A stretch of 64,000 nucleotides of DNA from Squalus acanthias (taxonomy: Eukaryota): NCBI GenBank assembly GCA_030390025.1, contig JASTWF010000180.1:1-64000 (forward strand), given 5' to 3'. Position 1 is the first letter of the stretch; the number at the start of each line of letters is the position of its first letter. Made by a program: the position numbers and the translations under genes. This document shows positions 120 to 62,389 of the stretch, piece by piece. Under the pieces are notes generated by a model that had not been told where the DNA came from, made no database searches, and worked only from the letters and a program-made list of their open reading frames with translations.

Positions 120-419
120 CGACACAGTCTCCTCCCACCCTCTACGCCCTGCTCTCCTCCTGTGGACAACCCAACACCGGCGGCCCCGTCACGTACGGCT
201 GTTTGGCGATGGATTACTTCCCGGAAATCACCAGCCTTTCCTGGAGTAAAGATAAAGAGCCGATCACCACTGGATTGAAGACCTACCCGTCAGTGTTCAA
301 CAAGCAGGGCACCTACACCTTGAGCAGCCAGTTAACCATCACCGAGTCAGAGGTGGGGAGCAGCGCCATCTACTGCCAGGTTCGACGAAGTGATTCGGAC
401 TGGAGCGTCCAAATGCCAG
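120..419 (+). CDS. IGHM: IgM heavy chain constant exon Cmu1 (C1-set Ig domain)
   Basis: Acceptor ttcccAG at 118-119, donor GTTAGT at 420. Translates (A)[14 protein letters not shown]...YGCLAMDY...SWSKD...TYPSV...[18 protein letters not shown], closely resembling elasmobranch IgM CH1 (Cys-Trp-Cys plus an N-terminal Cys for the light-chain bond). Confidence 0.95.
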
Positions 420-439
420 GTTAGTGTTGTGGGATACAG

Positions 440-1157
440 GGGGAAACTGTGAAAAGCAGAGAAGTTATGTTCAACTTCTATACAACTTTGTTTAGACCAG
501 ACTTAGAGTACTGTGTACAGGTCTGGTCTCCATATCACACTTAGAGCACTGTGTACAGGTCTGGTCTCGATATCACACTTCCAGTACTGTGCACAGGTCT
601 GGTCTCCATATCACACTTAGAGTACTGTCCATATTTCTGGTTTCCATATTATAAGAATGATACAGAGGCACTGGAGAAGTGCAAAAAAGATTTAGAAGGA
701 CGATACCAGAACTGAAAAATTGTAACTGTCAAGAATGATTGAACGGGTTTGGGATCTTTTCTCTAGAAAAGAGAAGGCTGAGGGGTGGCCGAATAGAGGT
801 CTTTAAAATTATGAAGGGGTTTGAAAGGTTAGATATAGCGACAATATTTCTGCTTGAGGAGGAGCCCGATACTAGGGGCCATAAATATAAGATAATCACT
901 AATAAATCCAATAGGGAATTCAGGAGAAACTTCTTTACCCAGAGAGTGGGTAGAATGTGGAACTCGTCACCACATGGAGTAGTTGAGGCGAACAGCATAG
1001 ATGCGTTTCAGGGGAATCTAGATAAGTACAGGAGGGAGAAAGGAATAGAAGGTTATGTTGATGGGGGAGATGAAGTAGGGAGAGAGGAGGCTCATGTGGA
1101 GCATAAACACCGACCTGTTGGGCAGAGTGGCCTGTTTCTGTGTTGTAGATTCTATGT
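440..1157 (+). mobile_element. CR1 LINE 3' fragment in Cmu1-Cmu2 intron (with a ~39-bp tandem duplication at ~500-650)
   Basis: Degenerate CR1 ORF2 C-terminus ([32 protein letters not shown]) plus 3' tail. Confidence 0.85.
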
Positions 1158-1228
1158 AAAAAACCGCTTTACAGTTCTTATTGTTTGGATTACAACAAAT
1201 AATCCCAATAAAATGTATTTTCTTGCAG

Positions 1229-1540
1229 ATCGTGTGGTACATCATCCAACTGTGATCCTCACCCTGAGTTCCAGTGAAGAAATCATCAGCAGCAGGTCTG
1301 CAACCGCCGTGTGTTCAATCATCGATTTCCGTCCAATGTCACTGACCGTGAATTGGCTGAAGAATGGACAACTCATGGATTCGGGCTTCGTCACCTCTCC
1401 CGTCTTTGAAGTGAACGGGAACTTCTCGGCGACCAGTCGGCTGACATTCACCGCAGGGGAATGGTTCGCCGGCTTGGTCTATACCTGCCAGGTCTCTCAT
1501 CAAGGGGACATCCAAAGCCGAAACATCACCAGATCTCCGG
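1229..1540 (+). CDS. IGHM: IgM constant exon Cmu2
   Basis: Acceptor ttgcAG 1227-1228, donor GTAAGA 1541, phase 1/1. HPTVILT...[10 protein letters not shown]...VNWLKNG...SATSRLT...YTCQVSH. Confidence 0.95.
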
Positions 1541-1599
1541 GTAAGAGACACAACCCCGAGAAGTCCCAGATCATTCTGAGCGCCGCACTCAGTCAGGAG

Positions 1600-3734: not shown

Positions 3735-4049
3735 ATGAGATCCGATGCAACGATCCAGAAATCACTCTTCCGCAACCGTCACTAGAACAGGTCTTACTGG
3801 AGGCGACGGTGACCTTAACCTGCGTCGTGTCTAATGCTCCTTATGGAGTCAACGTGTCCTGGACCCGAGAAAAGGAGACTTTGAAATCAGAGATTGCCGT
3901 CCAACCCGGAGAGGCTCCCAACAGCGTGATCAGCAACTTAAACATCTCGACACAAGCCTGGCTGAGTGGGGATGAGTTCTACTGCGTGGTGAGCCATCAG
4001 GATATGCCGACTCCTATAAGAGATTCCATCCACAAGGAAAAGGTGAGCG
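3735..4049 (+). CDS. IGHM: IgM constant exon Cmu3 (3' end ambiguous: 4042 or 4049)
   Basis: Acceptor ttcacAG 3733-3734. CNDPEITL...[26 protein letters not shown]...FYCVVSHQD...SIHKEK. Two GT donors follow: 4043 (phase 0, out of frame with Cmu4) and 4050 (phase 1, in frame). Confidence 0.9.
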
Positions 4050-4559: not shown

Positions 4560-4951
4560 CTAAAGATCCGCGGGAACCGTCCGTGTCTGTCCTCCTGCCC
4601 CCGGCAGAAGAAGTCTCCGCTCAGAGGTTCGTCAGCCTCACCTGCTTAGTGAGAGGTTTCTCCCCCCGAGAGATCTTCGTCAAGTGGACCGTCAATGACA
4701 AGCCGGTGAATTCCGGCAACTACAAGAACACCGAGGTGATGGCGGAGAACGGCAGCAGTTCCTTCTTCATGTACAGCCTGTTATCCATTGCAGCGGAGGA
4801 GTGGGCCAGCGGCGCTTCTTACTCCTGTGTGGTGGGACATGAAGCGATCCCCTTGAAGATCATCAACAGAACGGTTAATAAATCCAGCGGTAAACCCAGT
4901 TTTGTCAACATTTCCCTTGTTCTGATGGACACCGTCAATTCTTGTCAATGA
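4560..4951 (+). CDS. IGHM: IgM constant exon Cmu4 plus secretory tailpiece
   Basis: Acceptor ctgcAG 4558-4559. [11 protein letters not shown]...[18 protein letters not shown]...[11 protein letters not shown]. The tail [20 protein letters not shown] has an N-glycosylation sequon (NIS) and a penultimate Cys. An internal donor G|GTAAAC at 4890 serves the membrane form. Confidence 0.97.
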
Positions 4952-4979
4952 GAATCTCTCGATTGCATTTTAGTTCTTG

Positions 4980-14651: not shown

Positions 14652-14779
14652 ATTCCTCAGACCACATCCTGATTGAAGACTATGAGGAAGAGAGCGGCAA
14701 CATCTGGACAACCGCTTCCACATTCATCATCCTGTTCGTCCTGAGCATTTCGTACAGCGCTGCCGTCACTCTCGTGAAG
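14652..14779 (+). CDS. IGHM: IgM transmembrane exon TM1
   Basis: Acceptor ccgtAG 14650-14651, donor GTGAGA 14780. (D)SSDHILIEDYEEESGNIWTTASTFIILFVLSISYSAAVTLVK: acidic extracellular spacer plus a CART-type Ig TM helix. Not in the ORF track. Confidence 0.95.
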
Positions 14780-14792
14780 GTGAGAAGTGGAA

Positions 14793-18775: not shown

Positions 18776-18784
18776 GTCAAGTGA
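18776..18784 (+). CDS. IGHM: IgM transmembrane exon TM2 (VK*), followed by 3'UTR
   Basis: Polypyrimidine tract and cacAG, then GTC AAG TGA, completing the canonical KVK cytoplasmic tail. AATAAA at 18847-18852 and 19220-19225. Confidence 0.85.
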   Translation, partial: VK

Positions 18785-19612
18785 ACGGTTGAATTTGGAC
18801 GCCGTGGATTTTCCTCATCTGTTTATTAACATCTCTGTGTCATGAAAATAAAATATGTCCTCTTGGTGATTCTCAGCGTCAAATGTCTTCAGTTAATAGA
18901 TCCGAATCTGTAGCTGAGAAAATCATAACCGGGATTTCCGTCTCTCTGTTTGAAACGTGTGAGATCATCGTGACTATAATGCAAATGCATCTTACAGTTC
19001 TTTGAATGTTTCATGTGTAAATAATACCTTTTCTCGTTCCTAATTCACAATTGTTCCCTTCCCTTTATGTAGAGCCCCTGTTTTCTCTCCCTCTGATGTC
19101 TGTTACAGTTGTACAGATAACTGGCAGCTCAGACCACCTGTGATCTGGTCTCAATGTGACGCTCAGTTGTTATATTCACTTTGATGTTAACTTTTTAAAA
19201 ACGTCTCTGTAAAATTATTAATAAATCTGGAATGACAAATTAACTAACTTGGACTTTGCTGAATTACTTTCTCCAAGGCTCCTCCACACCGCTCCCTTTG
19301 CCTATCACACTTTGTTTTATTTCCCTGACAGGTATTTTTCACCCGTCCTGTCTGGGTTGTATTTGAACCCAAGTCTCTCCTGTTAAGGAGCCACTGCCGC
19401 CACCCAGTGTCCCATCAGAGTAACGACACCTTTACCCCTGCCTTTTCATGTCAAGGCCCAGAGGCGGAATGACTGCACAGCGACCTCGCAGTCCCCTCTA
19501 ATATTATGGTCTGTCACAGTCACATGACAGGTTCTATTAAAGAGCAGGGCTCTGCTCCATCACAGCCCTACAGTACAGTACATGGCAGAGCAAATCTCCC
19601 TCTACACTGTCC

Positions 19613-19725
19613 CTACATTACAACAGTGATTACACTTCAAAAAGTACTTAATTGGCTGTGAAACGCTTTGGGACGTCCGGTGGTCGTGAAAGGCGCTATA
19701 TAAATGAAAGTCTTTATTTTTCTTT
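19613..19725 (+). mobile_element. 3' fragment of Deu-SINE family
   Basis: Near-identical to the 3' end of the SINE at 24345-24805 (tacattacaacagtga...gaaaggcgctatataaatg). Confidence 0.75.
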
Positions 19726-20269
19726 CTTTCCCATCAAACACGCCCAGGGCAGGTACAGCATGGGTTACATATCTGACACAGGCACACCAGGAAGCACAAA
19801 CACTGGGAATGATTCCCAGAGACTGGGCCGAACTGACACACAGACTCTATCGCCATCTGTTTTGTTTACACACACTCAGACGCCCAAGGCAGAGAGGAAA
19901 GAAGGAGAGACTGTATTTGATAGAGAGCAGGTGAGGGATCAAGCGGTGCCCACAGGTACATTTGGAACTTTCTGCGGCCGGTGGTCACCGCTGAATACAG
20001 GTTTTATGAAAGACGGGCAAAATTCAATTATTATGGAATATCATTTTGGTTTTGTTCAGCCAAGTGTGCGAGTGGAGCCCTCCTCTCGGGATGGGCACCA
20101 TAGAATGTATTTTTATTTTGGATTCGCCCCTTTAAAGGAGACCCGAGTCCAAATGTTTCACACGGACCGAGGAATAAAGTAGGCCGAGCTCTGTGGTAAC
20201 CAGTTCCAACCCTTCTCCAATCTTAGCCACACACATTAACCCTGACCCTCTGTCTCCTGTATCCCTGTT

Positions 20270-20470
20270 GATCTGTCTACCTGCTCTGCTCAATCTACCT
20301 GAACTCACCTAACTTCACCCCAGGGACCATTTCTTGCTGCTCTGCTCAATGCCCTCTGAAACCATCTACCCGAACTCAATGAACATCACCCCAGGGATCC
20401 TATCTTCCTGCTCTGCTCCATTCCCTCTGATACCATCTACCCGAACTCACTGAACATCACTCCAGGGTTC
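20270..20470. repeat. Three degenerate ~63-bp tandem repeats
   Basis: tctacc(c/t)gaactca...catcac(c/t)ccaggg...ctgctctgctc repeated. Confidence 0.65.
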
Positions 20471-21524
20471 CGTCAGTGACCTTAAGATCTTCTCTCCCTG
20501 TTTCACTGAAGTTTCGCTCCTCCTCCTTTACCGTCTTATCGGATTCTTTCGGAGCCTCCCGTCCACCTGAACATCTCCAGAGGTTTCTGACCAGGCCCGA
20601 GTATCTTCCTGAATGTTCCTTCTGCTGGGGCGCTGCTTTTCCTCGAAACTCCCGGAGTTCAGGCGTGATGTCTCTTGTGGTTAAATAGCACATCAGGGTA
20701 AGGGAGGGAAGAATTAGCGGCCCTTCTGCAGGGCTCGGAAGGAAGTTTGGGAATGGATGGAGTTGGTGTTGAAACTGTCTCTGCCGCAGTCTCTCTCCCT
20801 CCCCTCTAAGCTACAATTACTTTTAGCAACCATCACTATGTCTCCCCGTCCCTGTCCTGACCCCAGGCTCGAGGACTCTCTGGCGGTGCAGGGCCCCTTT
20901 AAGACGCCCCGGGGTGACACATTCCCCCGTGGTCGGAGCCCTGAGTCAGGGGTCACAGACTGCTCAAACTGGAACACTTTAGCTTAGAGTGGACGCTGTA
21001 GACTGCCCCTGACTCTGTCCGTGACTGAATGTGAAAAGCAGCCAATTACGGTACTGTGACATTTAGAATGGATTGTGGCGTCATCCACTGCAGGGCAAAG
21101 CGGCGGCGGCCATGTTTGTGTGACGTGCGATGTGACGTGTAACTTCAATTTCCACGAAAGAAAAAGTCTCCCTTTCTTAATAAAAAGGAAAAAAAATGCG
21201 ACAGAGATAAAGATACAGATAGCGACTTTTAACGCGGTTGACGAGTGGCGCATGTGCGAATAGTGCTCCCATTGTGCAGCGCGGCCCGTGGTCGACAAAG
21301 GAGCTTTTCTGGTCCGCTGTGCATTGTGGGAAACTCTGTCCTGCATGGCCGCTTTAATCATTGATAGGGTGTGATACAACTGAACCACTGAATGGCAATT
21401 TATACCAGCCTCCAGAGGGAAAGCTGAAGCACGGACAGAGCTCATTAAATATCCGGGTTCGAAGGAATACACTGAAAGAAATAACACACACAGGCAGAAT
21501 ATGGGAACCAGATCCTGTCCTATA

Positions 21525-22710
21525 GGGGAGGTGAGAGTGACTGCCCTTGACATTAAGGCAGCATTTGACCGAGTGTGGCATCAAGGAGCCCTAGTAAAAG
21601 TGAAGTCAATGGGAATTGGGGGAAAACTCTCCACCGGCGGGAATCATACCCAGCACAAAGGAAGATGGTTGTGTTGGTTGAAAGTCAATCAACACAGCCC
21701 CAGGAAATCGCTGCAGGAATTCCTCAGGGCAGTGACCTAGGCCCAACCATCTTCAACTGCTTTATCAATGACTTCCCTCCAACATAAGGTCAGAAATGGG
21801 GATGTTCGCTGATGACTGCACTGTGTTCAGTGCCATTCACAACTCCTCAGATAATGAAGTAGTCCATGCCCGCATGTAACAAGACCTGGACAACGTTCAG
21901 GCTTGGGCTGATAAGTGGCAGGGAACATTCGCGCCACACAAGTGCCAGTCAATGACTATCTCCAACAAGCGAGAGTCTAATCACGGCAATTTGACATTCA
22001 ACGGCATTACCATTGCCAAATCCCACACCATTAACATCGTGGGGGGTCACCATTGACCAGAAACTTAACTGGACCAGCCCCATAAATACTGTGGCAACAA
22101 GAGCAGGTCAGAGGCTAGGTATTTTGCGGCAAATATCTCACCTCCTGAATCCCCAAAGCCTTTCTAACATCTACAAGGCACAAGTAAGGAGTGTGATGGA
22201 ATACTCTCCACTTGCCTGGATGAGTGCAGCTCCAACAACACTCAAGAAGCTCAACACCATCCAGGACAAAGCAGCCCGCTTGATTGGCACCCCATCCACC
22301 ACCTTAAACTTTCACTCCCTCCACCACCGGCGCACCGTGGCTGCAGTGTGTACCATCTACAAGATGCACTGCAGCAACTTGCCAAGGCTTCTTCGACAGC
22401 AGCTCCCAAACCCGCGACCTCTTCCTCCTAGAAAGACAAGGGCAGCAGTTGCATGGACACACCACCACCTTCAAGCTCCCATCCAAGTCACACACCTACC
22501 CGACATGGAAATATATAACCGATCCTTCATCGTCCCTGGGTCAAAATCCTCGAACTCCCTCCCTAACAGCACTGTGGGAGTACCATCACCACACGGACTG
22601 CAGCGGTTCAAGATGGCGGCTCACCACCACCTTCTCAAGGGCAATTAGGGATGGCCAATAAATGCTGGCCTTGCCAGGAACACCCACATCCCATAAACGA
22701 ATAAAAAAAC
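21525..22710 (+). mobile_element. L2/CR1-group LINE 3' fragment (second family)
   Basis: VRVTALDIKAAFDRVWH, PQGS.LGP, FADD, YKAQVRSVMEYSPLAW; A-rich 3' end. Confidence 0.88.
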
Positions 22711-23092
22711 GGAGCGACCAGCAGGAAGTTCCTGGCGCTGTCAGCAACCTCTTTCTCGGAGCTGATCTGAACATTGATCTATGACTTTAAGGGAAAACAG
22801 CTGATCAGCAGCAGAAAGGACAGTTTAACCGGTCGGTTCATTCTGTGATCGATCTTTCGGGCCGATTGGATTCTGCAGTTTGTTTTCTCGGCCGCTCCTG
22901 GAAACAGTTGGGTGACAGTTTGATCCGAGGTTAATTTGGTTTCCTCTCGGTGTGTGTTTGAGCGCCTGACAGCGCGCTGCACATTGTGGCTGCATCTGCC
23001 CGCGATTCCACACAACCCCAACAGACAGGAGCTCCGCCCTACAGTCCAATGGCAGTTTTTGTCCGGGGGTGAGACTGCTTTCCATCACTGTG

Positions 23093-23556
23093 AGTCTCAG
23101 AGCGCAGTAATACACGGCAGCGTCAGTCAGCTGCAGCCCGGAGATGGTTAAACTGGTGAATTTAGTCGAGGTCTGGAGCACAGCTGAGAAACGGGTTTTA
23201 GCAAAATCTGCTTTATCTTCAGAACCGCTCGAGTATTTCCACAGTATAAACTCGGGCTGTGTGTCTGGGTGTTGCCGGTACCAGTATAAATAATAGCCGC
23301 TCACTGTAGTATCATAGGTACAGCTTAAAGTCACCGCTTCTCCTTCTGTCTTAACTCCTGAGGACAGCGGCTGAGTGACAGAATCTCCAAGACTCAGATC
23401 TGAAAAACATGTTCAAACAGGAAAAGATCAGACCGGCGGGTGTTTAAAATTCAGATTTAAATCATATCAGAAATGAGAGAAAAGATTAAATGTGTTTGGT
23501 CCACAATTACCTGTCAGAAATGCCCCCCACACAGCCCAGATGCTGAGTAGCCGCAT
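23093..23556 (-). CDS. TCR alpha/delta-type V segment V1 (intact): leader 23556-23511, V exon 23399-23093
   Basis: Leader MRLLSIWAVWGAFLT|GTAATT. V: DSVTQ...TLSCTY...LYWYRQ...RFS...LTISGLQLTDAAVYYCALR. RSS CACAGTG(23092-23086)-23-ACAAAAACT(23062-23054). Confidence 0.93.
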
Positions 23557-25197: not shown

Positions 25198-25489
25198 ACG
25201 GTTGCCTTGCAGATGAAGTGCTATAATCGCCGGTCTCCAAAACAGTCCAGCTGGGAGATCCGGCGCAGTTCGATTGCAGCTACACCACCTCCGGGATATC
25301 CGCCTTCCACTGGTACAAGCAGAGCCCGAATGGACGGCTGCAGCGGGTCATCACCAGCACAAGGAGCGGCAAAGACGTGGTCGGACGGTTGGAGATCGTG
25401 CTTGAAACTAGCGAAAAGCGAGGCTATTTCGCTTTCAGAAGGACGGAGGCGCCGGATTCCGCCGTCTATTACTGTGTAATCCAGGCACT
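25198..25489 (+). pseudogene. TCR V segment V2, nonsense codon in FR1
   Basis: DEVL*SPVSKTVQLGDPAQFDCSY...FHWYKQ...DSAVYYCVIQ, with TAA at 25224-25226. RSS CACTGTG(25490-25496)-23-ACAAAAACC(25520-25528). No clean leader found. Confidence 0.88.
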
Positions 25490-25654
25490 CACTGTGACAG
25501 CAATGAGCGGCACCGCTGTACAAAAACCTGGCCTCGGGAGGGACTCGCCCTGCTTTACAAAGATCATCTGTGTCATTGTTTACAAGACACCTGCCCGTTA
25601 GGTTAGAGAATGAAGATTTAATTGTATTATTGCCTCCGACAGCACATTGATCAA

Positions 25655-27557: not shown

Positions 27558-29220
27558 ATGTCAAAGGATTTCGGGGCTTTCGTTGTGATTCTTATTCTGA
27601 AATTCGGTGAGACGTTTAGTTCGTATTAAAATAAATATTTGGAAAATAAATATTTGTCTTATGGAAGGAGGGCCGGATGTAGAGAGAGAGGGATTGGATG
27701 GATGAGGGAATGATGGATGGATGGATGGACGAATGTTTGGAGAGAGAGCGCGGGAGAAAGGGAGGGACGGACGGATAGATGGATGGATTGGGTTGGATTG
27801 ATCATTCGCTTGGACTGGAGGGAGGTATGCAGTAGTGGTCCCCAGGGGTCGGTATTAATACCACTGCTCTTTTTGATATAAGTTAATGACTTGGACTTCA
27901 ATATACAGGGCTTAATTTCAAAGTTTGCAGATGACACAAAATTCGGAACTGTAGTAAAAATGAGGAGGATAGAAACGGATTTCAAGAGGACATAGATAGA
28001 TAGGTGAAATGGGCAGACGCATCGCAGATTAAATTTAACGCAGAGAATTGTGAAGTGATATATTTTGGTAGGAAGAATGAGGAGAGGCAATACACACTAA
28101 ATGATACAATTTTGAAGGGGGTGCAGGAACAGAGGGAGACCTGGGGGTGTATGTAGACAAATATTTGAAGGTGGACATGTTGAGAAGCCTGTGAAAAAGC
28201 AGATGGGCTTTATTAATAGGTATAAAGCACAAAAACAAAAAAAGTTATGCTAATCCTCTCTTAAACACTGGTTAGGCCTCAGCTGGAATATTGTGTTCCA
28301 TTAAGGACAACACTTTACGAAGTATGTCAAGGCCTTGGAGAGGGTGCTGAGGCGATTTACTAGAATGGGACCAGGGATGAGTCACGACAGTTATGTGCTG
28401 GGACTGGGGAAGCTGGGGTTGTTTTCTTTAGAGCAGAGAAGGGTAAGGGGAGTTTTGATAGAGGTGTTCAAAATCATGGACGTTTTGATAGAGTAAATAA
28501 GGAGACACTGTTTCCAGTGGCACTGGGGTCGGTAACCAGAGGACACAGATTTAAGGTGACTGGCAAAAGAACCAGAGGCGACATGAGGAAACATTCTTCT
28601 ACACAGCGAGTCATTGTGATCTGGAATGCACTGCCTGAAAGTGTGGTGGAAGCAGATTTAATAGTAACTTTCAAAAAGGAATTGGATAAATACTTGAAGG
28701 GAAAACATTTCCAAGGCTACGGGGAAAGAGCAGGGGAGTGGGACTAATTGTATAGCTGTACCAAAGAGCTGGCACAGGCGCGATGGGCCGAATAGCCTCC
28801 TTCTGTGCTGTATCATTCTCTGATACCAGGATTCTAGGATGAAGAGAGGGAGTGAGCAGATATTGGTGTCTCCGGTATCTAAGCCTCTATTTGTTTCCTT
28901 TTTATTTATGCAGGAGTGTGTTATTCGAATACAATTAAGCAACCGACAGCATCAGTACCATGCGTGGAGAAAGAACGCATGGTGTTGCCCTGTTCATACT
29001 CCACAGACAGCCGCCGATATGACCTGTTCTGGTATCGGCAAAGAACGGGGGAGGCGCCGGTGCTTTTAGTCACGAGGAATTCTGAGGGAGAAGAACAAAA
29101 ACCAGAGCGTGTGGGAGGCCGATTCTCTTCTACCCTCCGAGTATCGGATCGTTTCTTCAGTTTAACCCTGGCAGGTTTACAGCTGGGTGACAGTGCGATG
29201 TATTATTGTGTGCTGAAGAT
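27558..29220 (+). CDS. TCR V segment V3 (intact): leader 27558-27606, V exon 28914-29220; intron expanded by CR1
   Basis: Leader MSKDFGAFVVILILKF|GTGAGA, phase 1. V: NTIKQP...LPCSY...LFWYRQ...GRFS...LQLGDSAMYYCVLK. RSS CACAGTG(29221-29227)-23-ACGGAAACT(29251-29259). Confidence 0.88.
27660..28830 (+). mobile_element. GGAT/GA microsatellite followed by CR1 RT/3' fragment inside the V3 intron
   Basis: PQGSVL, KFADDTK, TRGHRFK motifs; simple repeat at 27660-27800. Confidence 0.85.
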
Positions 29221-38358: not shown

Positions 38359-38461
38359 CTTTTTAAAAAGGGTCTGTTCCCTTGAACTGCAGGCACCGTC
38401 TGCGACAGTTTTATTTTGCTGAGGTTTTTGTACAGCGACAGTTGAGTTTTAAAACACTGTT

Positions 38462-38906
38462 GATTCTCAACCAGCAGTAATATATGGCGGTGTCCTGGAT
38501 TTCCGCTCGAGTAATCGATAAAGGAAACTTCTTTTCTGCGTTGGTCTGGTCGGCCTCGAATTTTCCCGTGGCAAAATCGGCATCCTTTTTCCTGCTGTTA
38601 TCTCTGTACAAAATAAATCGCAGCGCCTGGTTCGTGTACTGCTGGTACCAGTACAGATCGGGGTTACTGTCGCTTGTTGTGTAGCTACAGTTTATTTTCA
38701 CACAATCTCCTTCAGTGACATAGAGCGTGGTCTGAGTATGTGACCTCCGAATCTGCCTTAATCTCCCCTGAAATAAAAGTTAACTGAGTGTTGAATACAA
38801 TACTGAGATAGAAAGTGTATAAACATCACATTAGTGCAAACAGACACAAGGCCTGGCCATACCTACCGAACACCAGCCACAATATAACGAGGTGACGGTA
38901 CGACAT
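38462..38906 (-). pseudogene. TCR V segment V4: FR1 frameshift and mutated heptamer
   Basis: Leader MSYRHLVILWLVF (38906-38867). The V exon from 38767 has a +1 shift before VKINCSY...LYWYQQ...DTAIYYCWL. RSS AACAGTG-23-ACAAAAACC. Confidence 0.87.
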
Positions 38907-41930: not shown

Positions 41931-42077
41931 ATGAAAGATGGTTTTCTCATCATTCCCTCAATGACAAATATTTGTTTCATGAGTCGCTCGATGGCAGATT
42001 TCATTGCTTAGCTCTTGGGTTGGTCTGTGGTGTGGTGAGGTTTTTGTACGGAGGTCGAGCAGTTTTGAAGCACCGTG

Positions 42078-42507
42078 ATCCTCACTCCGCAGAAATAGAC
42101 GGCGCTGTCTTCAGTCTCTGCTGCAGAAATTGACAAAGGAAAAACTTGATATTGACTGAAATGGCGAGCATCGAATTTTCCTTTCGCAAAATCGGCATCC
42201 CTTCCCCTGGTGTTATCACGGTACAAGATAAACTGCGGTGCCTGGTTCGGGTACAACCGGTACCAGTAACGATCCGGATCAGCCGAGCTAGTGTTGTAAT
42301 TGCAGTTCAATTGAGAATTTTCTCCTTCATATACTTTCACCTCATGTTGAGGCTGCATTACAGAACTCCCTTGGATTTTACCTGTAAAAATGATTTAAAT
42401 TACCAGTTAATCCCTCTGTAAATTAGCAAAATCCACGCCATCAGAGGGAACACATATCACTATCGACCTATTAAAAGGGACATCAGGAACAGCTCAACCA
42501 GCGCCAT
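42078..42507 (-). CDS. TCR V segment V5 (open frame): leader 42507-42468, V exon 42381-42078
   Basis: Leader MALVELFLMSLLI with a weak GTCGAT donor. V: SVMQP...QLNCNY...YWYRL...DFAKGKF...EDSAVYFCGVR. RSS CACGGTG(42077-42071)-23-ACAAAAACC(42047-42039). Confidence 0.88.
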
Positions 42508-44946: not shown

Positions 44947-45411
44947 ATGCGACTACTCAGCATCTGGGTTGTGTAGGGGGCATTTCTGACAGGTAATCGA
45001 GGAACAAATACACTTCATCTTTTTCTCATTTTCGAAGCATGTTTTGAAGCTGAATTTTAAACACCCGCCGGTCTGATCTTTTCCTATTTGAACATGTTTT
45101 TCAGATCTGAGTCTTGGAGATTCTGTCACTCAGCCGCTGTCCTCAGGAGTTAAGACAGAAGGAGAAGCGGTGACTTTAAACTGTACCTATGATACTACAG
45201 TGAGCTACTATTCTTTATACTGGTACCGGCAACACCCAGACACACAGCCCGAGTTTATTCTGATGAAATACCCGAGCGGTTATGAAGATAAAGCAGCATT
45301 TGCTGAAACACGCTTCACTGCAAAGCTCCAGATCTCGAGTAAATTCACCAGTTTAACCATCTCGTGGCTGCAGCTGACCGACACTGCAGTTTATTACTGT
45401 GCTCTGAGACT
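44947..45411 (+). pseudogene. TCR V segment V6 (V1 paralog): intact V exon 45105-45411 and RSS, but TAG stop in leader
   Basis: Leader MRLLSIWVV* (TAG 44974-44976, TGG in V1). V ends DTAVYYCALR. RSS CACGGTG(45412-45418)-23-ACAGAAACT(45442-45450). Confidence 0.88.
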
Positions 45412-46012
45412 CACGGTGATAGAAACCAGTTAAACCCTCGTACAGAAACTCCCGCCCCTTTGTAGATCAGAGGTAACCCAAGTCTCGAGGGAGCAGCGAG
45501 AAACATGTGTCAACAGCGCCCTATCACTGCTATGATGGGAACTTTTACACTGTTTTGATACTGGATGAAAACACACGGTCAGTGAATTTATGGGGCAGTT
45601 TCCAGCGCCCATTTATGAGGAGAGGTATTGCAGCGATATTGATCACAAATGTCGATAAACATATACGGGCCACTTCAGTTTAAATCGCGCTGATTCTTTT
45701 TCTTTTTTACATTTGTTAGGGAAACCAGTTGATTGAAGCTCGTTAAAACAATATGAAACCACAGAGATGCGGACTTTAATTACAGCGTCACATACAGTGG
45801 ATGGAGATTCGCCTCATGATTCCCGTCTATCCAATATACTTTGGGATAATTTAATGTAACTGCTGCCATTTTAAACTTGTCGCTGAGCTGCCGTTATTAT
45901 CTTTCATTATAATTGCGAGTTGAAATCACTAGCGAATATAATTCCGCGAGTGGGCCACCCATGGTCTTGTTGAGAGTTGTTTTCTGTTGCCCTTTTCAGA
46001 AGGTCTTGTGAC

Positions 46013-46180: not shown

Positions 46181-47200
46181 AAGGATTAGGATCTCTTGTT
46201 ATTAAGGTGCAGTTTAGTGTGACATAACTTTTCCTCTACAACCGTCATTTCAGGAACCGGCATTTCAGGAACCGGCTGTTCCATTGTGTCTTGGTGGCTC
46301 AATTTTAACGTAAATTAATTGTAATAGTCACCATCATCATCATTTCACCAATAATAACACCTGGGTTGCAGCAGTCAGGGCGAGAATGGATTTTTACTGG
46401 GAAGGAAATGCTTACTGTGAAGTGATATGATGAGGAGTGGTGCGAGACGGTTCTGCATGACGCTTCCTGTGTCTGTAACTCTGCAGTCTGGGAAATCCTC
46501 TGTGGGAGCAAAAATACAGATCCCCCCCCCCCCCCCCCCATTGCACTGCTGAACCAACCAATGCCGAAAAGGGAACAGCGGCAGCAATTCCTCCAATAAA
46601 ACAGGGCAGGCAAGGCGAGTCAGAGCGAGAGCAGCAAACGGAAGCTGTGGGCGGGGCTGCCGCGGAGGGTGTTGTCACACGTAGGATCCACCTGTGAGGA
46701 ACTGAATTCAATAATAATGTCCCCTTCGGAAATTATTTAACTCTGTCACTCTGTAAGGGCTGCGTTACTTTCACATTCGTTACTAATTCGGGGCAAGCAG
46801 GCTCGCAAAAGAATTGGAGATTATTTTATTTTCGAATTGTTACCAAAATCTTCATCAGTGATGTGGGTCAAAAACAGTGCCTGAAACTAGCGGTGGGAAA
46901 TAGAACAAAACTGCAAACGATCCCGAAGTTCTGGAGGTGCACAGCTCATTAACACTTTAATAACGTGTGAAATTATTCAACTACATAACATTAATAAGCA
47001 GAAATATGAGATAAAGCGGAATTTCACGTTAATTTATACTGAGGAAGTGTCAGCCAGAATTGGTTGATGGAGGGTGACCGGCGGTGGGAATCCGCGCTCT
47101 GTCAGCGCCACCTGGTGGACGTGATAAAAGTTTCTCTCTTTGAGCTGATTTCACAGAACACGGTAATTGTACGAGGTGGCCAGAGGTCCTTCTCACTGTG

Positions 47201-47495
47201 GGCCTCAGTGCACAGTAGTACACGGCGCTGTCAGCGAGCTGCAGCTCAGTCAGGGTGAAAACAGCGATATTTCTGGACGTTTCCAAAGTGACAGAGAAAC
47301 GGCCTTTAACGTCGTCCTTTCCATGGGTATGTGCATGAATTACGAAAGTGGGAGCTTTGTTCTTGTTCTGACGATAAAGCTGCAGGGAATAGTTCGAATC
47401 TGCGCTTGAATAGATACAATTAATGCTCATCGAGGTTCCTTCCAGATATTTGGCATCTGTTGGCCACTGCCCGACGGAATCTCCAGAACTCAGTC
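47201..47495 (-). CDS. TCR V segment V7 exon (open frame, conserved Trp replaced by Leu; leader probably in gap 47533-47694)
   Basis: DSVGQ...SINCIY...SLQLYRQ...GRFSV...LQLADSAVYYCALR. RSS CACAGTG(47200-47194)-23-ACAATTACC(47170-47162). Confidence 0.85.
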
Positions 47496-48584
47496 CTGCA
47501 GAAAACATTTCTGGTTACCAATGGAAACAGAANNNNNNNNNNNNNNNNNNNNNNNNNNNNNNNNNNNNNNNNNNNNNNNNNNNNNNNNNNNNNNNNNNNN
47601 NNNNNNNNNNNNNNNNNNNNNNNNNNNNNNNNNNNNNNNNNNNNNNNNNNNNNNNNNNNNNNNNNNNNNNNNNNNNNNNNNNNNNNNNNNNNNNCTTTTC
47701 TTGCTTAAGATATTAAGTAATTACTAATATCTGTGTATGCCTGGAAATAAAGAGACAGAAAAAGAAAGCATTAGAATAATGGCTAGACATAGATAGGCAC
47801 ACAGGTAGAGAGAGAGAACGAGATACAGATAGGTAGAGAGATAACCATACAGACAGACAGATAGAAAGCTACACAAAGAGGTGGATAGGCCTTAAGATCA
47901 ATGACTAGAAGACAGTTGTATCAATAGTGGAATGGACAGACAGGCACAGATGTATAAATAAATGAACAAACCAAAATACAACGTTGTTAGGCCCCAAATA
48001 ACGCAACCCCCAAACTCCATAATGGCCGCAGTCTCTCCACACTGGGACCCCGCACTTCACCCGGTGCCTTACCTCAGTTGCAGCTTTCGGACTGAAGGGG
48101 AGAATTTGAAGTGTTTCTGTCAGCAGACGGAGTCCCCGTCATTTCCTGAATCAAACCAAGAGCCTCGTTTCAATGAGCTGCCGGTGATCATTGTCGCTGT
48201 CTGTGTTTATCATCACTACCCGCGGCCGCGGCACACAGGCTCCGTGAGCTGTTCTGCTTTGTCCCGGACATCTGACCATCCGATCCCGGGAATGTGTGCG
48301 GATTCTGTCTGACCGTTATCGGCCTCACCCACAATGTCATGGGCACATCCCGGAACTGCTCCTAAGGAGGAAGAAATCATCCCTTCGATTGATGTTTATT
48401 CTTCAAAAGACAGTGTGCTGAACGTGTTTTGAACCCGATGCTGACGGTTAATGAGGAGTCGATATTAGGGTTTTCTTGTTGATGAAATGTTCCATTTGAT
48501 AGAAATGAAAATCTGACACGATGTTGTCGCAATGTCACTAACTCAGAATTTCCCATTATTCACAGTTTACTCTTGAACATTTTT

Positions 48585-49000: not shown

Positions 49001-49327
49001 AATGCTCTATGTGAAGCTTATAGGAACACAGGAGGGCGCTGTCTGATCACTTCTTAATGATCTTTCGTCTCAAACAACTCAGCTGAATATAAATAAAGAT
49101 CCTCAACAACATGTCAACCAGTTGTGTATGTCTGGGTTTACGTTGTCTGCGTGTGTGTATATATGTGTAGGTGTGTGTGTGTGTGTTGTATGTGGGTGTA
49201 TGTGTGTGTGCGCGTCACGGCTGATACTTACTGACAAGGGCGGGTTCCCTTGAACTGGAGGCACCTTCTGCGGCAGATTTATTTCGCCGAGATTTTTTAC
49301 ATCGACAGATGAGTTTAAAACTCTATG

Positions 49328-49761
49328 CTGCTCAGCAGACAGATATATACGTCGGTGTTCTGGATTTTCGCTCGAGTGATCCTTAAATGAAATGTAATTT
49401 CTGAATTGGTTTGGCCGGCCTCGAACCTTCCCTTGGCAAATTCCGCCTTATTTTTGCGCTCTTATCTCGATCCAAAATAAATCGCGGAGCCTAGTTCTTG
49501 TACTGCTGGCACTAGTACAGATCGGGGTTACTGAGCTTTGTTGTGTAACTACAGTCGATTTTCACACCATCTCCTTCAGCGCGGTCTGAGGTTGTGACAC
49601 CGAATCTGCCCGAATCTCCTCTGAACTAAAAGTTAACTTGAGGGTTGAACACAATTACTGAGTTAGAAAATCTATTAACATCACATTAGTGCAAACAGAT
49701 ACAAGGCATTGCCATACCTACCGAACACCAGCCACAATATAAGGAGGTGACGGTACGACAT
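49328..49761 (-). pseudogene. TCR V segment V8 (V4 paralog), multiply disrupted
   Basis: Same leader family (MSYRHLLILWLVF), Trp codon changed to TAG, further stops and indels, heptamer CATAGAG, eroded nonamer. Confidence 0.82.
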
Positions 49762-50480: not shown

Positions 50481-51035
50481 GGGAAACTCGGGATTGTTAA
50501 TGGTGATAGAAAACATTCCAGCATTAAAGAGACATTCTGAAGGGCCATGGACATTGGGGGAACTCTGCACTTGGGGCTTGTTTGAAAGAACACAATCACT
50601 ACCTTGTGAACTCTGTTCATTGTGTATAAACTGTCTCTGGTCCAGCAACATACTCTGATCAAATAAACCCTGTGTACACGCCGCGATCCCATTAAGGGTC
50701 CGAGAAACTGACAGGGCAGATGTGTAAATGGCTGCACAATATTGCAGGCAGGCACAGAAAGGGCATCAAGGGACAAAAGGGGAGTTAAGGCGACACAAAT
50801 GGATTTATGAAGTTCATTTTTAGTATAAATATGTGCTGAAATCAATTAATATAATTCTGCAAGTGGACCTCATCTGCTCTTGTTGAGTGTTCTTTTAAGA
50901 ATCTCCCTGTGTCTCACTGTGGAGGCTGAATTTTCGCTTCTGGTTACCGATATGAGAGCGCCCTCTGGTGATCCTTAACTGGAAGTCTCAGTGTGGGTTT
51001 TTGTACGGGGTCCGCTATATCTCGGCAGCAGTGTG

Positions 51036-51467
51036 GGGCTCATGGCACAAAAATACACGGCCGTGTCGGAGACAAGTGCCCCGGCGATATTTAAAGGAAC
51101 CGTTTTATTTATTTCGTTCATATTAACAGAGAACCTGTCTGATAAATCTGGAGACTTGGCTCCGTCCTCTGAGCTATAGCTCTTCAGTAAATATCTCGGA
51201 GCTTCTCCGGGATACTGGATGTACCAGAACAGAGTTGAACCAGCTTTGGAGTAACTGCAGCTCAGTATTATGGTCTGTCCTTCCTGAACCTTTAATTCAG
51301 ACGGATCCTGGAGCACTGAATCTTCGCCATTCGTTCCTGTAACAAAACAGAGAATGTATCAGAAGTTTTGGAGTAAACATGACCCATGGAACACAAACTG
51401 ACCCTTTAAACATAGACTCACCGGGCAGCATGATCATCAATATCAGTAAGGAACATGGGGAGCACAT
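51036..51467 (-). CDS. TCR V segment V9 (intact): leader 51467-51422, V exon 51336-51036
   Basis: Leader MCSPCSLLILMIMLP|GTGAGT. V: DSVLQ...ILSCSY...LFWYIQYPG...SDTAVYFCAMS. RSS CACACTG(51035-51029)-24-ACAAAAACC(51004-50996). Confidence 0.9.
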
Positions 51468-58777: not shown

Positions 58778-59175
58778 ATGAATGAAATTGCAACTTTTAC
58801 TTTTTTTATTTTAGGTGAGTTTTATTTGCAGAAAAGCGTTCGCCGTTACAATATATTTCTTGTGTTTAATTTTCCGTCTCTTTTATATCGGCAGTTATCG
58901 GCGGCGAGGCTGTGATCCACCAACCACAGCAGGTGTTTGCACAAGAGGGACAATCGATTGAATTCCAGTGCAATGCGACCACCAGCGGCTCTGAGCGTAT
59001 ATTCTGGTACAGACAACTACAGAACCGTGGCCCTAAGTTTATCATATCTGCTATCAAGGGCAACAACACTGATGGACGATTCAAACTTTTCATCGACCCA
59101 ACAAGAAGTTATAACATTCTCGGTATGGACAGCACCGCGGTATCAGACGCTGGAGTGTATTACTGTGCAGTGAGG
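58778..59175 (+). CDS. TCR V segment V10 (intact): leader 58778-58814, V exon 58895-59175
   Basis: Leader MNEIATFTFFIL|GTGAGT, in phase. V: VIHQP...EFQCN...IFWYRQ...GRF...SDAGVYYCAVR. RSS CACCGTG(59176-59182)-23-ACAATATCT(59206-59214). Confidence 0.88.
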
Positions 59176-60674
59176 CACCGTGAGACAAAGGCTTAACGCT
59201 CCAGTACAATATCTCCTGCAGGTTCCGAACAGACAATCTCCACACCGCTCCTCTGCTCTCCTGAATGTTTTGCCTCCTTTGTGGGGTTACAGTTCCACAA
59301 GCTCCATTCATTCTGTGAGAACGGTTTAATCAGACTGTTCTAAAGTCTACTAATGTTATACTGCTATTTCATTTTGTAATAATGTTAAGCTTTAGCCTTT
59401 GCCTGTTAAGCAGGGAAGTTTAAGCCAACTTAAATTATCACTGGCTATTGAGCCAGGGCTGACACAGCAGCAGTGTTTAGTTTCGTCACTTCAGTTGCAA
59501 ACGGAGACCATTCATGGAATTATAGAATCAATGAATCATACAGCACGGGGGAGGCCATTCGGCCCTTTGTTCCAGTGCCGGCTCGATGAAAGAGCAATCC
59601 AATTACTCCCACTCCCCTGCTCTTACACTTTAGCCCAGCAAATTTCTCTTTTTTCATGTTTGAAACATTGTTCAGCTACTTTATTTAAGAAAATGGATAA
59701 AGTATTAGATTCGGAAATAGAGGCATTGATTTCAAATGCAAGTTGTGTTTTTTAATGTTATGATGAATTACTAAGGTATTGTGAATGTCAACATATTGTA
59801 AATATTTTTACTGAGCAGTTCACCTCAGTATCACTGACCCTATCTGCTGCTTGCTCCCTCCCATTCTACTCAAACCTATTATTCACTTCCCACTTCATTC
59901 ATCCAAGACGCGCCGCTTGTCTAATTTACCGCATCGTTGTGTTCAAATCCCTCAGGACCCGCTGACCGTCTATTTCTCCCTTTATATAGGCTGGGGGTAG
60001 CTCTAATGGTTATTGAGCAGCTGTTTTGATGGGAGCCTCCCGCACTGATACCAGTACAACATTAACTATTCCCCTTCGCTGCCGCCATCTCACAGATTGA
60101 CCCGATTAAATGGACAACATTGGGTTTATTCCCCGTCCAGTTCTCAGTTGTCATGAGAACAATTTCATTCTAATGTAACATTCCTATTTACACCGAGGTG
60201 TCCGCTCTTTGCGGTAGAATTCCTCTGGTCGCTACTCCGAGTGACATCGTGAACGCATTCTAAAATAATGAATGACGATTCTACTAAACTAGCGATGAGA
60301 CGAGATTTCCCGCTGTGCTTAGGATGTCGCTAACACAGGGAGACCAGAGGAAATCTTCCCCTTGTTTATCCCCAGCATAAGATTATCAAACCCGACCTCC
60401 TGTCAACCACCTGAGTCTCATTACTGACAGTGAGAGAAACAAACTGAACATCTTCATCTACATTCAAATAGTTTTTGTCACTTTGAGGTACTTTCCTCCG
60501 GTCAAACTGTCTCTCAGGTAAATTAGAGATCAAGCTGTCTTCGGGTGAATTAGAGATCAAGCTGTCTCTCAGGTCAATTAGAGATCAAGCTGTATCTTTT
60601 TCTTAGTCTTTCTCGCTCTGATCAGCAGGATGCTAAGTTAATGTCTCAATTTTCTGAAATACACTGGTGGTTAA

Positions 60675-60940
60675 AGAACTGACATCAGAGCAGCCGCAGT
60701 CGGCGCTCTCAGCTCTTTCTGATAGATATTCTGCAGGAAGTGACATCTGACATCAGACCAGCCCCCTCGGCGGTCTCAGATCTTTCTGATTGATGTTCTG
60801 CAGGAAGTGACATCAGACCAGCCGCAACAGGTGCTCTCAGCTCTTTCTGATTGATGTTCTGCAGGATATGGCATCAAACCAGCCCCAACCGTTGCTCTCC
60901 GCACTTTCTGATTGATGTTTTGCAGGTTTCTGTGACACAA
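60675..60940 (+). promoter_or_regulatory. Putative V11 promoter made of ~4 tandem 60-67-bp units carrying Ets (CAGGAAGTG) and CRE-like (AGTGACATCA) motifs
   Basis: Repeated gctctcagctctttctgattgatgttctgcaggaagtgacatcagaccagcc immediately 5' of the ATG at 60970. Confidence 0.55.
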
Positions 60941-60969
60941 AAGGTCCCTCCAATTCCGGAGCAGCAGCA

Positions 60970-62058
60970 ATGCGGCACCCCATTCTCGCTGTGCTGTGGG
61001 TGACATTACTTCTCGGTAAGAAGTTTATAACTTTAAAAAGGAATTAATTTCTAGAGGACTACAATTCAAAGGCAGAGCGGTTACGGTAAGCTGGTATCGA
61101 ACCGTGGTTAAACCAGACTTGGAGAAATAGGCACAGTTCTGGTCTTCTAATTACAGAAAGGACATGGAGGCATTAGAGAAGATGCAACAAAGATTCACAA
61201 GGACGACACCAGAACTGAGAGATTATAACTTCAGGAAAGATTCTACAGGTTGGGTGTCTTTACTCCAGGAAGGAACGGCTTAGGCGCGACCACAGACACA
61301 TCTTTAAAATTACGAAGCTGATTGTGAGGGTAGACGTAGAGAATATGTTTCCACTTGTGGTGGAGTCCAAAACTCCTCGGCAGAAATATTAGATTATCAC
61401 AAAAAAATCAAATAGGAAATTCAGGAGAAAAGTCTTTACCAAGGTTAGAATGTGGAACTCGTTACCACAAGGAGTCGTTGAGGCGAACAGCATAGATGCG
61501 TTTTAGGGGAAGTGAGATAAGCGCATGAGGGAGAAAGGATTTGAGCGATATGCTGATAGGGAGAGATGAAGAAGGTTGGGTGGAGGCTCGTGTGGAGCAT
61601 AAACACCGGCGTAGACCATTTGTGCTGAATGACCTACTTCTGTTCTGTAAATTCTATTTAATTTTATGTAAAACTCACTGCGCATTTTCACCGTCAGTTG
61701 GTTCAGTTTGAAGCTTTAATCGATGATTTCCGCTTTCTTTAACTGTGTGTTCCAGATCTGAGCGATGGAGATTCTGTTACTCAGCGGGAGCGCTCGCTCA
61801 CACAGACAGAGGGAGAAGATGCCACTTTAACCTGCACCTATCCCGGCGATGGTTATTACTTATTCTGGTACCGCCAATACCCGGGCAGACAGCCCGAGCT
61901 TGCAGTCCGGAGGCATACGAACGGCGGTTTTAAATATCAGGCGATTTCGCTCAAGGCCGGTTTTCTGATACAGTCCTTGGGTCAGAGAAGTTGTACCTAT
62001 TGACCATCTCGGAGCTGCGGCTTACTGACACCGCGGTGTATTACTGTGCACTGAGTCT
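60970..62058 (+). pseudogene. TCR V segment V11: leader 60970-61015, V exon 61756-62058 with a -1 frameshift near 61941
   Basis: Leader MRHPILAVLWVTLLL|GTAAGA. V reads DSVTQ...TLTCTY...LFWYRQYPG, then shifts frame before DFAQGRFS...DTAVYYCALS. RSS CACAGTG(62059-62065)-23-ACAATAACT(62089-62097). A CR1 fragment occupies the intron (~61030-61660). Confidence 0.87.
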
Positions 62059-62389
62059 CACAGTGATGGGAACGAGCTAAAGCCTCGTACAATAACTGCC
62101 GCAGGTTTCTGGGTCACAGCTGCTGTCTATTGTGGGCTGTTTATCACAGCGGGTCAGACACTGACACGTGAATACATTCCTGTGCGCGCAGACCCCGATC
62201 AGAATCCACATAAAACTCATACCAAACCGTCACATCGAATACTGATTCCGTCTGATTATTGTATTAACTGTGTGAGGTCAGCATTGACTGCTGTTTATTT
62301 ATGTATTTCTGGGAACACGCCAGTCTCTTTGAGAATAAACACACCTGCGGGTTACTGGAAGTGGTTCTATCGATGCACCGCTGCTTTGG

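What the first reader, a model, noticed from the sequence alone, without database searches (positions are those of the whole stretch)
120..62097. An IgM constant region directly abuts a TCR alpha/delta V array
Seen: a full Cmu1-4/sec/TM1/TM2 set ends at 18784, and the first TCR-type V (23-RSS) is only ~4.3 kb away. Ten more Vs follow with no unrelated protein-coding gene seen between them. Established: sharks have clustered IgH miniloci, and nurse shark makes chimeric TCR-delta chains using IgM/IgW V segments, as well as NAR-TCR. As I recall, Ig elements have been placed within its TCR alpha/delta locus. Inference: this window is a physical Ig-in-TCR junction, so the 'trans' rearrangements could be ordinary cis V(D)J events in a shared Ig/TCR domain. 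The general arrangement is probably not new, but this instance and its geometry may be.
Basis: partly seen in the sequence, partly recalled or inferred. Interest (0 to 1): 0.88.

Follow-up and report, generated by a model that had tools for sequence, protein, structure and literature searches.

The report
Shark IgM gene beside TCR V segments
In this cartilaginous-fish sequence an intact antibody (IgM) constant gene lies 4.3 kb from a mixed-orientation array of eleven T-cell-receptor alpha/delta-type V segments, an arrangement that was already published for sharks and rays in 2025.

Summary
All six IgM constant exons (Cmu1-4 with secretory tail, TM1, TM2) are intact and splice-compatible at 120-18784. 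Eleven V-set segments follow at 23054-62097, each ending in a 23-spacer RSS or a decayed one. The first RSS lies 4270 bp past TM2, and no N gap separates the Cmu exons from V1-V3. Named relatives of the Vs are TCR alpha/delta V genes.

- The Vs point both ways inside every gap-free block.
- Only four (V1, V5, V8, V9) look intact. Five are impaired and two are uncertain.
- The window holds no J segment and no constant exon other than the Cmu ones.

The read test could not bridge the junction, because only 80-150 nt contigs were laid.

Flajnik et al. 2025 (PMC12227049) already report TCR alpha/delta-type V exons between IgH clusters in four elasmobranchs. They also already propose that this proximity explains the trans-rearrangements. 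The scan's unchecked notes record the same pattern on other pieces of this genome.

Verdict: real, ordinary for this lineage, already known.

The parts
120..419 (+). Cmu1 exon
   Evidence: Acceptor AG at 118-119 and donor G|GTTAGT after 419. Pfam C1-set E 4.6e-13.
1229..1540 (+). Cmu2 exon
   Evidence: Acceptor AG at 1227-1228 and donor G|GTAAGA after 1540. C1-set E 9.2e-16.
3735..4049 (+). Cmu3 exon
   Evidence: Acceptor cacag|AT at 3734/3735. The in-frame phase-1 donor is G|GTGAGA at 4049/4050. A second GTGAGC donor at 4042/4043 is out of frame. C1-set E 4e-8.
4560..4951 (+). Cmu4 exon with secretory tailpiece. Internal donor G|GTAAAC at 4889/4890 for the membrane form. AATAAA about 30 nt after the stop.
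   Evidence: Sequence. C1-set E 2.1e-22. Residues 6-128 align to human 'Immunoglobulin heavy constant mu' chains, tailpiece included, E about 1e-49.
14652..14779 (+). Mu TM1 exon
   Evidence: Found by motif scan. Acceptor tag|AT and donor AAG|GTGAGA. Phase matches the Cmu4 internal donor.
18776..18784 (+). Mu TM2 exon (Val-Lys-stop)
   Evidence: cag|GTCAAGTGA. A contig of run X16, guessed to be RNA, starts its match at 18777 with 151 nt lying elsewhere. That fits a TM1-TM2 splice, but it may come from a paralogous cluster (record 9).
23054..23556 (-). V1, looks intact. Leader ATG at 23556, donor after 23511, V exon 23399-23093, RSS CACAGTG-23-ACAAAAACT at 23092-23054.
   Evidence: V-set E 4e-12. 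Best hits: Chiloscyllium 72%, teleost 'TCR alpha/delta variable' about 48%. X16 contigs begin at 23399 and end at 23093, at about 97% identity (records 15 and 16).
25213..25528 (+). V2, probable pseudogene. In-frame TAA at 25224-25226 in FR1. RSS CACTGTG-23-ACAAAAACC.
   Evidence: No leader found. Nearest Atlas clusters are TVA11 and A6-TCR Valpha.
28914..29259 (+). V3. The V exon is open but no leader was found. A repeat element at 28356-28819 lies just upstream. RSS CACAGTG-23-ACGGAAACT.
   Evidence: V-set E 3e-11.
38423..38906 (-). V4. The V exon is open but the heptamer is damaged (reads AACAGTG). The nonamer ACAAAAACC is intact.
   Evidence: V-set E 5e-11.
42039..42507 (-). V5, looks intact. 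RSS CACGGTG-23-ACAAAAACC.
   Evidence: V-set E 1.8e-9.
44947..45450 (+). V6, pseudogene. A TAG stop sits in the leader although the V exon is open. It is an inverted duplicate of the V1 block. RSS CACGGTG-23-ACAGAAACT.
   Evidence: 93% mean column identity to V1 over 584 columns. Blocks 23054-23846 and 45450-44656 match at 89.6%.
47162..47514 (-). V7. The V exon is open, but Leu replaces the conserved Trp before YRQ. The leader region falls in or beyond the N gap at 47533-47694, which I did not fill. RSS CACAGTG-23-ACAATTACC.
49291..49761 (-). V pseudogene of the V4 family, with stops in the V exon and a decayed RSS.
   Evidence: 82% identity to the V4 block and 80% nt identity over the V exon.
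50996..51467 (-). V8, looks intact. Leader ATG at 51467, donor GTGAGT. RSS CACACTG-24-ACAAAAACC.
   Evidence: V-set E 1.5e-9.
58778..59214 (+). V9, looks intact. Leader ATG at 58778, donor GTGAGT. RSS CACCGTG-23-ACAATATCT.
   Evidence: Nearest Atlas clusters are TVA11 and TVAZ2.
61743..62097 (+). V10 pseudogene, with a frame change and a stop. RSS CACAGTG-23-ACAATAACT.
   Evidence: It appears as two fragments in different frames.
18785..23053 (.). The 4270-bp junction between TM2 and the V1 RSS. It contains no N. A high-copy short repeat lies at about 19602-19768 and a LINE fragment at about 21439-22774.
   Evidence: (depth table). No Pfam family other than those listed was found among fragments of this stretch.

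Best explanation
This is a true germline piece of the elasmobranch 'antigen receptor complex', where IgH miniclusters sit among TCR alpha/delta-type V segments.

Shown:
- An intact Cmu gene able to make secreted and membrane mu chains.
- 4.3 kb downstream, an old and diversified array of eleven 23-RSS V segments of about nine families, in both orientations.
- Four of the eleven look usable.

Inferred:
- The usable Vs rearrange in T cells to 12-RSS Ddelta or Jalpha elements elsewhere on the same chromosome. Vs facing the D/J-C region would join by deletion, which excises any IgM cluster in between. Vs facing away would join by inversion.
- The same shared neighbourhood lets an IgM cluster's own 23-RSS VH reach Ddelta in cis. 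That would give the published IgHV-TCRdelta chimeras.
- The array grew by block duplication with inversion, for example the V1 and V6 blocks, followed by decay of many copies.
For: Cmu gene:
- Exon anatomy and phases.
- C1-set matches for all four C exons.
- Match to mu chains including the tailpiece.
- Shark and chimaera IgH-like best hits.

V segments:
- 11 V-set segments with an RSS.
- Of 105 profile hits, every hit with a receptor-class name is TCR alpha/delta V, TRAV or TVA1 (7 hits). Three more carry automatic 'VPRE' names. None is named IgH, IgL, TRB or TRG.
- Each of the nine open Vs has a TCR alpha/delta-named hit at E of 3e-12 or better.
- The two least typical Vs fall nearest to TCR V-alpha clusters.
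- PDB single-V matches are mostly TCR alpha chains.

Assembly:
- Both orientations occur within each gap-free block.
- The inverted duplicate blocks are only about 90% alike, so they are old duplicates and not assembly doublets.
- Only 2 pairs of Vs exceed 75% nt identity.
- All 30 bins of the junction are covered in DNA contigs of two samples.

Published arrangement: PMC12227049, sections 6 and 15.
Against: - No read or contig bridges 18.8-23.1 kb. The laid pieces are 80-150 nt, and the junction holds two high-copy repeats where a misjoin could hide.
- No TCR D, J or C lies in the window, so linkage to a TCR D-J-C region is not shown here.
- Five of 11 Vs are impaired and two are uncertain, which would also fit a decaying outpost.
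- The cluster's VH-D-D-J is off-window, so I cannot say the IgM cluster is complete.
- The class names of the hits are automatic annotations, and candidate retrieval is word-based, so other V classes had less chance to appear.
- The expression evidence comes from one run whose RNA nature is a guess, at about 97% identity. It may stem from paralogues.
Confidence: 0.8

Rival explanations
1. Orphon outpost. The adjacency is real, but this IgM constant gene and these Vs sit in a satellite region, on an unplaced piece or another chromosome. They would be too far from, or unlinked to, any TCR D-J-C, and most Vs would be relics that are never used.
For: - 5 of 11 Vs are impaired and 2 are uncertain.
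- The window has no J or TCR C.
- The scan's notes spread similar findings over many pieces of this genome (unchecked).
Against: - Four Vs keep a leader, open frame and RSS.
- Contigs of run X16 start at the V1 acceptor and stop at its heptamer border, as a spliced, rearranged V1-family transcript would.
- The published maps put such Vs between IgH clusters on the TCR alpha/delta chromosome.
Confidence: 0.1
2. Assembly misjoin. The IgM 3' flank and the V array come from different places and were joined at a repeat.
For: - The junction has a very high-copy short repeat at about 19602-19768 and a LINE fragment at about 21439-22774.
- No laid piece spans them.
- A joint that skips 21520-22708 occurs in three runs.
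Against: - No N in 1-29728.
- All 30 bins are covered in three DNA runs from two samples.
- The skipping joint is what an empty-site allele or a paralogue of a LINE insertion would give.
- The same arrangement is reported in four other elasmobranch assemblies and noted on other pieces of this genome (unchecked).
Confidence: 0.07
3. The Vs belong to another receptor class, for example a light-chain type, TCR beta or gamma, or a V 'intermediate between TCR and Ig', rather than TCR alpha/delta.
For: - Identities to named TCR alpha/delta Vs are only 29-49%.
- PDB lists are crowded with antibody scFv chains.
- PMC12227049 mentions V domains intermediate between TCR and Ig in this region.
Against: - No hit named IgH, IgL, TRB or TRG among 105.
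- The Atlas puts beta, gamma and IgL clusters below the V-alpha clusters.
- The scFv scores are sums over two V domains.
- No J-C lies next to any V, as shark light-chain clusters would have.
Confidence: 0.03

Closest known systems
Elasmobranch antigen receptor complex (AgRC) of Flajnik et al. 2025, Sci Adv (PMC12227049): IgM, IgW and IgNAR miniclusters linked to TCR alpha/delta, with TCR alpha/delta-type V exons between IgH clusters
   Same: An IgM minicluster constant gene followed within a few kb by TCR alpha/delta-type V exons, with the same proposed consequence, namely easy VH-to-Ddelta rearrangement. I read sections 6 and 15 in full.
   Different: - The paper's text gives no distances, V orientations (the word 'orientation' occurs 0 times), RSS details or functional status.
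- Its table S1 with coordinates is a supplement, which I could not see.
- The species of this window is unknown to me, so it may or may not be one of the paper's four.
VH-type segments inside TCR delta loci: nurse shark TAILV (Deiss et al. 2019) and VH-delta of frog, chicken, coelacanth and monotremes
   Same: Ig and TCR gene segments share one rearranging neighbourhood.
   Different: There, Ig-like Vs sit in a TCR locus. Here, TCR-like Vs sit beside an Ig constant gene. I know these papers only through their citation in PMC12227049. Deiss 2019 was not held.
Teleost TRA/TRD loci with V segments in both orientations
   Same: Mixed V orientation, which implies both deletional and inversional joining.
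   Different: No Ig clusters are interspersed there.

Membership tests
IgM heavy-chain constant gene (shark minicluster type) | Four C1-set constant exons with phase-1 splice borders | tested here: met
   C1-set matches for all four exons. Borders read.
IgM heavy-chain constant gene (shark minicluster type) | Mu-type secretory tailpiece on the last C exon, with an N-glycosylation site and a penultimate Cys. An internal donor in that exon leads to two TM exons, the second encoding Val-Lys. | tested here: met
   Sequence. Aligns to human mu chains through the tailpiece. That these features define mu is recalled knowledge.
IgM heavy-chain constant gene (shark minicluster type) | Own VH-D-D-J a few kb upstream of Cmu1 | not testable with these tools
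   The window starts 119 nt before Cmu1.
TCR alpha/delta V gene segment | Split leader, V-set exon with Cys23, Trp41 and Cys104, followed directly by a 23-spacer RSS | tested here: met
   Met in full by V1, V5, V8 and V9. Met in part by the other seven, as listed under parts.
TCR alpha/delta V gene segment | Closer to TRAV/TRDV than to TRBV, TRGV, IGHV or IGLV | tested here: inconclusive
   All class-named hits are alpha/delta, and the nearest Atlas clusters are V-alpha. No tree with curated references of all classes could be built.
TCR alpha/delta V gene segment | Found rearranged to Ddelta/Jdelta or Jalpha and spliced to Cdelta or Calpha in transcripts | tested here: inconclusive
   One contig of run X16 (RNA is a guess) ends exactly at the V1 coding end with about 100 nt lying elsewhere. 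Another starts at the V1 acceptor. The partner sequence was not shown.
Elasmobranch AgRC arrangement (PMC12227049) | TCR alpha/delta-type V exons lying next to or between IgH miniclusters | tested here: met
   A further IgM CH2-like relic about 29.8 kb beyond the window is only an unchecked scan note.
Elasmobranch AgRC arrangement (PMC12227049) | Same chromosome as TCR alpha/delta D-J-C and PSMB5 | not testable with these tools

The most novel reading that the evidence does not exclude
The TCR-type Vs beside IgM clusters may be a two-way shared pool. A + strand 23-RSS V lying upstream of the next IgM cluster could join that cluster's D in cis in B cells. This would give mu chains with a TCR-type V domain, the mirror image of the known IgHV-TCRdelta chimeras. 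The mixed orientation would then let inversional joins reshuffle whole IgM clusters. Nothing here shows this. It is only not excluded.
Probability: 0.05. Interest if true: 0.8.

Novelty: already known. Interest (0 to 1): 0.25.

Why it matters
The window gives a base-level example of how closely antibody and T-cell-receptor gene segments are interleaved in cartilaginous fish. An intact Cmu gene and a usable TCR-type V lie 4.3 kb apart.

This supports the published view that Ig and TCR genes arose in one complex, and that shark 'trans' rearrangements are local events.

The details that the paper's main text does not give could guide tests of which Vs are used and by what joining mode. These are V orientation, RSS quality, the roughly half-decayed V content, and the inverted block duplications. 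They do not change the picture.

Tried and rejected
- Read test of the junction. The best DNA holders had only 0.47 and 0.43 of the sampled words. All laid records were short contigs, so continuity could be neither confirmed nor refuted.
- PDB sequence searches for V class. The rankings are distorted by two-V scFv chains and are useful only as weak support.
- Search for J segments by nonamer, spacer, heptamer and an FGXG-type motif found nothing. I did not scan separately for D segments.
- Deiss 2019, Ott 2021 and Criscitiello 2010 were not held. I know them only from the text and reference list of PMC12227049.
They may show whether this very locus is already mapped.
- Species: not identified. 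Run organisms are coded. The best Cmu4 hit is 83% to Chiloscyllium punctatum.
- I considered and rejected the idea that the mixed V orientation comes from wrongly oriented scaffold pieces. Each of the three large gap-free blocks has Vs on both strands.
All searches were exon by exon.

Full report
**What is there: the IgM gene.** The window opens 119 nt before a complete IgM constant gene on the + strand.

Exon borders read directly from the sequence:
- Cmu1 120-419
- Cmu2 1229-1540
- Cmu3 3735-4049
- Cmu4 with secretory tail 4560-4951
- TM1 14652-14779
- TM2 18776-18784, encoding Val-Lys-stop

All four C exons match Pfam C1-set (E 4e-8 to 2e-22). Every border has AG/GT, and the phases fit one another. 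This includes the internal G|GTAAAC donor in Cmu4 at 4889/4890, which serves the membrane form.

Cmu3 has two adjacent GT donors, and only the second (4049/4050) is in frame. That agrees with an earlier scan note.

Cmu4 plus tail aligns over residues 6-128 to human mu chains. Its best named relatives are a Chiloscyllium punctatum protein (83%) and Callorhinchus 'immunoglobulin heavy chain IgH' (64%).

The long Cmu4-TM1 and TM1-TM2 introns hold three insertions:
- a 52-nt tandem array at 5383-8717
- a LINE with an 891-aa stop-free frame carrying endonuclease and RT domains at 9326-11998
- a second RT-bearing element at about 15.6-18.6 kb

**What is there: the V array.** A motif scan, an RSS scan and a profile built from the window's own Vs find eleven V-set segments between 23054 and 62097.

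Nine have open V exons. Two are broken by stops or frame changes: 49291-49761 on the - strand and 61743-62097 on the + strand.

Nine carry a recognisable heptamer, 23 (once 24) nt spacer and nonamer directly after the conserved Cys. V4 has lost the first C of its heptamer. The 49-kb pseudogene's RSS is decayed.

Orientation in map order, V1 to V10:
- V1: - strand
- V2, V3: + strand
- V4, V5: - strand
- V6: + strand
- V7, the 49-kb pseudogene, V8: - strand
- V9, V10: + strand

Functional reading from leaders, frames and RSS:
- V1, V5, V8 and V9 look intact.
- V3 is uncertain. No leader was found, and a repeat lies just upstream.
- V7 is uncertain. Leu replaces the conserved Trp, and its leader region is in or beyond an N gap.
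- V2 is impaired by an in-frame TAA in FR1.
- V4 is impaired by its heptamer.
- V6 is impaired by a TAG in the leader.
- The two frameshifted segments are impaired.

**Class of the Vs.**
- V1's best hits are Chiloscyllium (72%), Callorhinchus (about 60%) and teleost proteins named 'T-cell receptor alpha/delta variable' (about 48%).
- A profile of the nine open Vs (alignment A3) returned 105 proteins at E of 1e-8 or better, from 375 candidates. Seven are named as TCR alpha/delta V, TRAV or TVA1. Three carry automatic 'VPRE' names. None is named as IgH, IgL, TCR beta or TCR gamma. The rest are unnamed Ig-like proteins.
- In a local blastp each of the nine Vs hits a TCR alpha/delta-named protein at E of 3e-12 or better, with 29-49% identity.
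- The two least typical Vs (V9, V2) fall nearest to Atlas clusters named TVA11, TVAZ2 and A6-TCR Valpha. Beta, gamma and light-chain clusters rank lower.
- PDB searches give mostly TCR alpha chains among single-V chains, but they are crowded by scFv constructs.

I call the Vs TCR alpha/delta-type with good but not formal support. I could not build a tree with curated references.

At the nucleotide level only V1/V6 (91%) and V4/49-kb pseudogene (80%) exceed 75% identity. The array therefore holds about nine old families.

**Between and around.** I scanned 129 stop-free fragments of 76 aa or more from 18.8-64 kb, with simple repeats and N-bearing fragments left out. Apart from overlapping Ig families, only V-set (10), RVT_1 (1) and GIY-YIG (1; 52652-52966 on the - strand) matched. 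I saw no unrelated gene, but short exons would be missed.

No J-like segment was found. The only constant exons seen are the Cmu ones.

**Is the junction real?**
- TM2 to the V1 nonamer is 4270 bp.
- The three N gaps lie at 29729-29870, 30783-30946 and 47533-47694. The Cmu gene and V1-V3 are therefore in one gap-free stretch.
- Each gap-free block has Vs on both strands, so wrongly oriented scaffold pieces do not explain the mixed orientation.
- The V1 block (22120-23846) is an inverted copy of the V6 block (43833-45450) at about 90% identity. The V4 block is a direct copy of the 49-kb block at 82%. These are diverged duplications and not assembly doublets.

Sequencing runs of a coded 'organism A' hold 0.43-0.47 of the junction's sampled words. 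Laid on 18600-23600, three DNA runs from two samples cover all 30 bins. The records are 80-150 nt contigs, and none bridges the stretch. The test therefore shows presence, not continuity.

Two high-copy repeats lie in the junction, at about 19602-19768 and about 21439-22774. A joint that skips 21520-22708 appears in three runs. It is best read as an empty-site allele or a paralogue of the LINE insertion.

**Hints of expression.** Run X16 may be RNA, but that is only a guess. It gave three suggestive contigs:
- One contig's match starts at the TM2 exon (18777), with 151 nt lying elsewhere.
- One starts at the predicted V1 acceptor (23399), with 43 nt lying elsewhere.
- One ends at the V1 coding end (23093), with about 100 nt lying elsewhere.

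This is what spliced membrane-mu mRNA and a spliced, rearranged V1-family transcript would give. Identities are about 97%, so paralogues or another individual cannot be excluded. The partner sequences were not shown.

**What is known.** Flajnik et al. [quoted passage not shown] - This proximity 'easily' supports VH-to-Ddelta transrearrangements.

The main text says nothing about V orientation (0 occurrences of the word), distances or functional status. Coordinates are in a supplement that I could not see.

The scan's own unchecked notes list the same pattern on several other pieces of this genome, and an IgM CH2-like relic about 29.8 kb past this window.

**Mechanism.** Shown: an intact Cmu gene, and 23-RSS alpha/delta-type Vs in both orientations within 4.3-43 kb of it.

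Inferred from the 12/23 rule and from the cited paper:
- The usable Vs join to 12-RSS Ddelta or Jalpha elements elsewhere on the chromosome. Joining is by deletion or inversion according to orientation, and intervening IgM clusters are lost on deletion.
- The cluster's own VH can reach Ddelta in the same way.

None of these steps was tested here.

**Verdict.** The finding is real but ordinary for elasmobranchs. Its added value is descriptive detail.

Noticed in passing
window 5383-8717: A tandem array of a 52-nt unit, about 64 copies at 92% matches, C-rich on the coding strand. It fills much of the intron between the secretory end of Cmu4 and TM1.
   Followed up: no
window 9326-11998 (+): A LINE with an 891-aa stop-free frame carrying endonuclease (Exo_endo_phos) and RT (RVT_1) domains sits inside the Cmu4-TM1 intron. 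It is possibly a young copy.
   Followed up: partly
window 21520-22708: Contigs of three DNA runs from two samples join 21520 to 22708 with 4 other letters between them, skipping 1187 nt of the LINE fragment. This looks like an empty-site allele or a paralogue lacking the insertion.
   Followed up: no
window 22120-23846 and 43833-45450: The V1 and V6 blocks, with their flanking LINE pieces, are inverted duplicates at about 90% identity. The V4 block (38348-39092) and the 49-kb pseudogene block (49216-49947) are direct duplicates at 82%.
   Followed up: yes
window 54699-57633: A 24-nt CT-rich tandem array, about 124 copies at 88% matches. Similar CT-rich low-complexity DNA flanks two of the N gaps (29.4-31.3 kb) and lies at 48.5-49.0 kb.
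   Followed up: no
window 52652-52966 (-): A weak GIY-YIG match (E 1.9e-4, just under Pfam's cut-off). It may be a Penelope-like retroelement remnant between V8 and the CT-rich array.
   Followed up: partly
window 14902-15146: A 19-nt / 57-nt GC-rich tandem repeat starts about 120 nt after the TM1 donor.
   Followed up: no
window 23900-24025 (+) and 46077-46235 (-): Two short V-like fragments matching the middle of the V profile (E 1.8e-3 and 2.8e-4). They are probably relics of further V segments.
   Followed up: no
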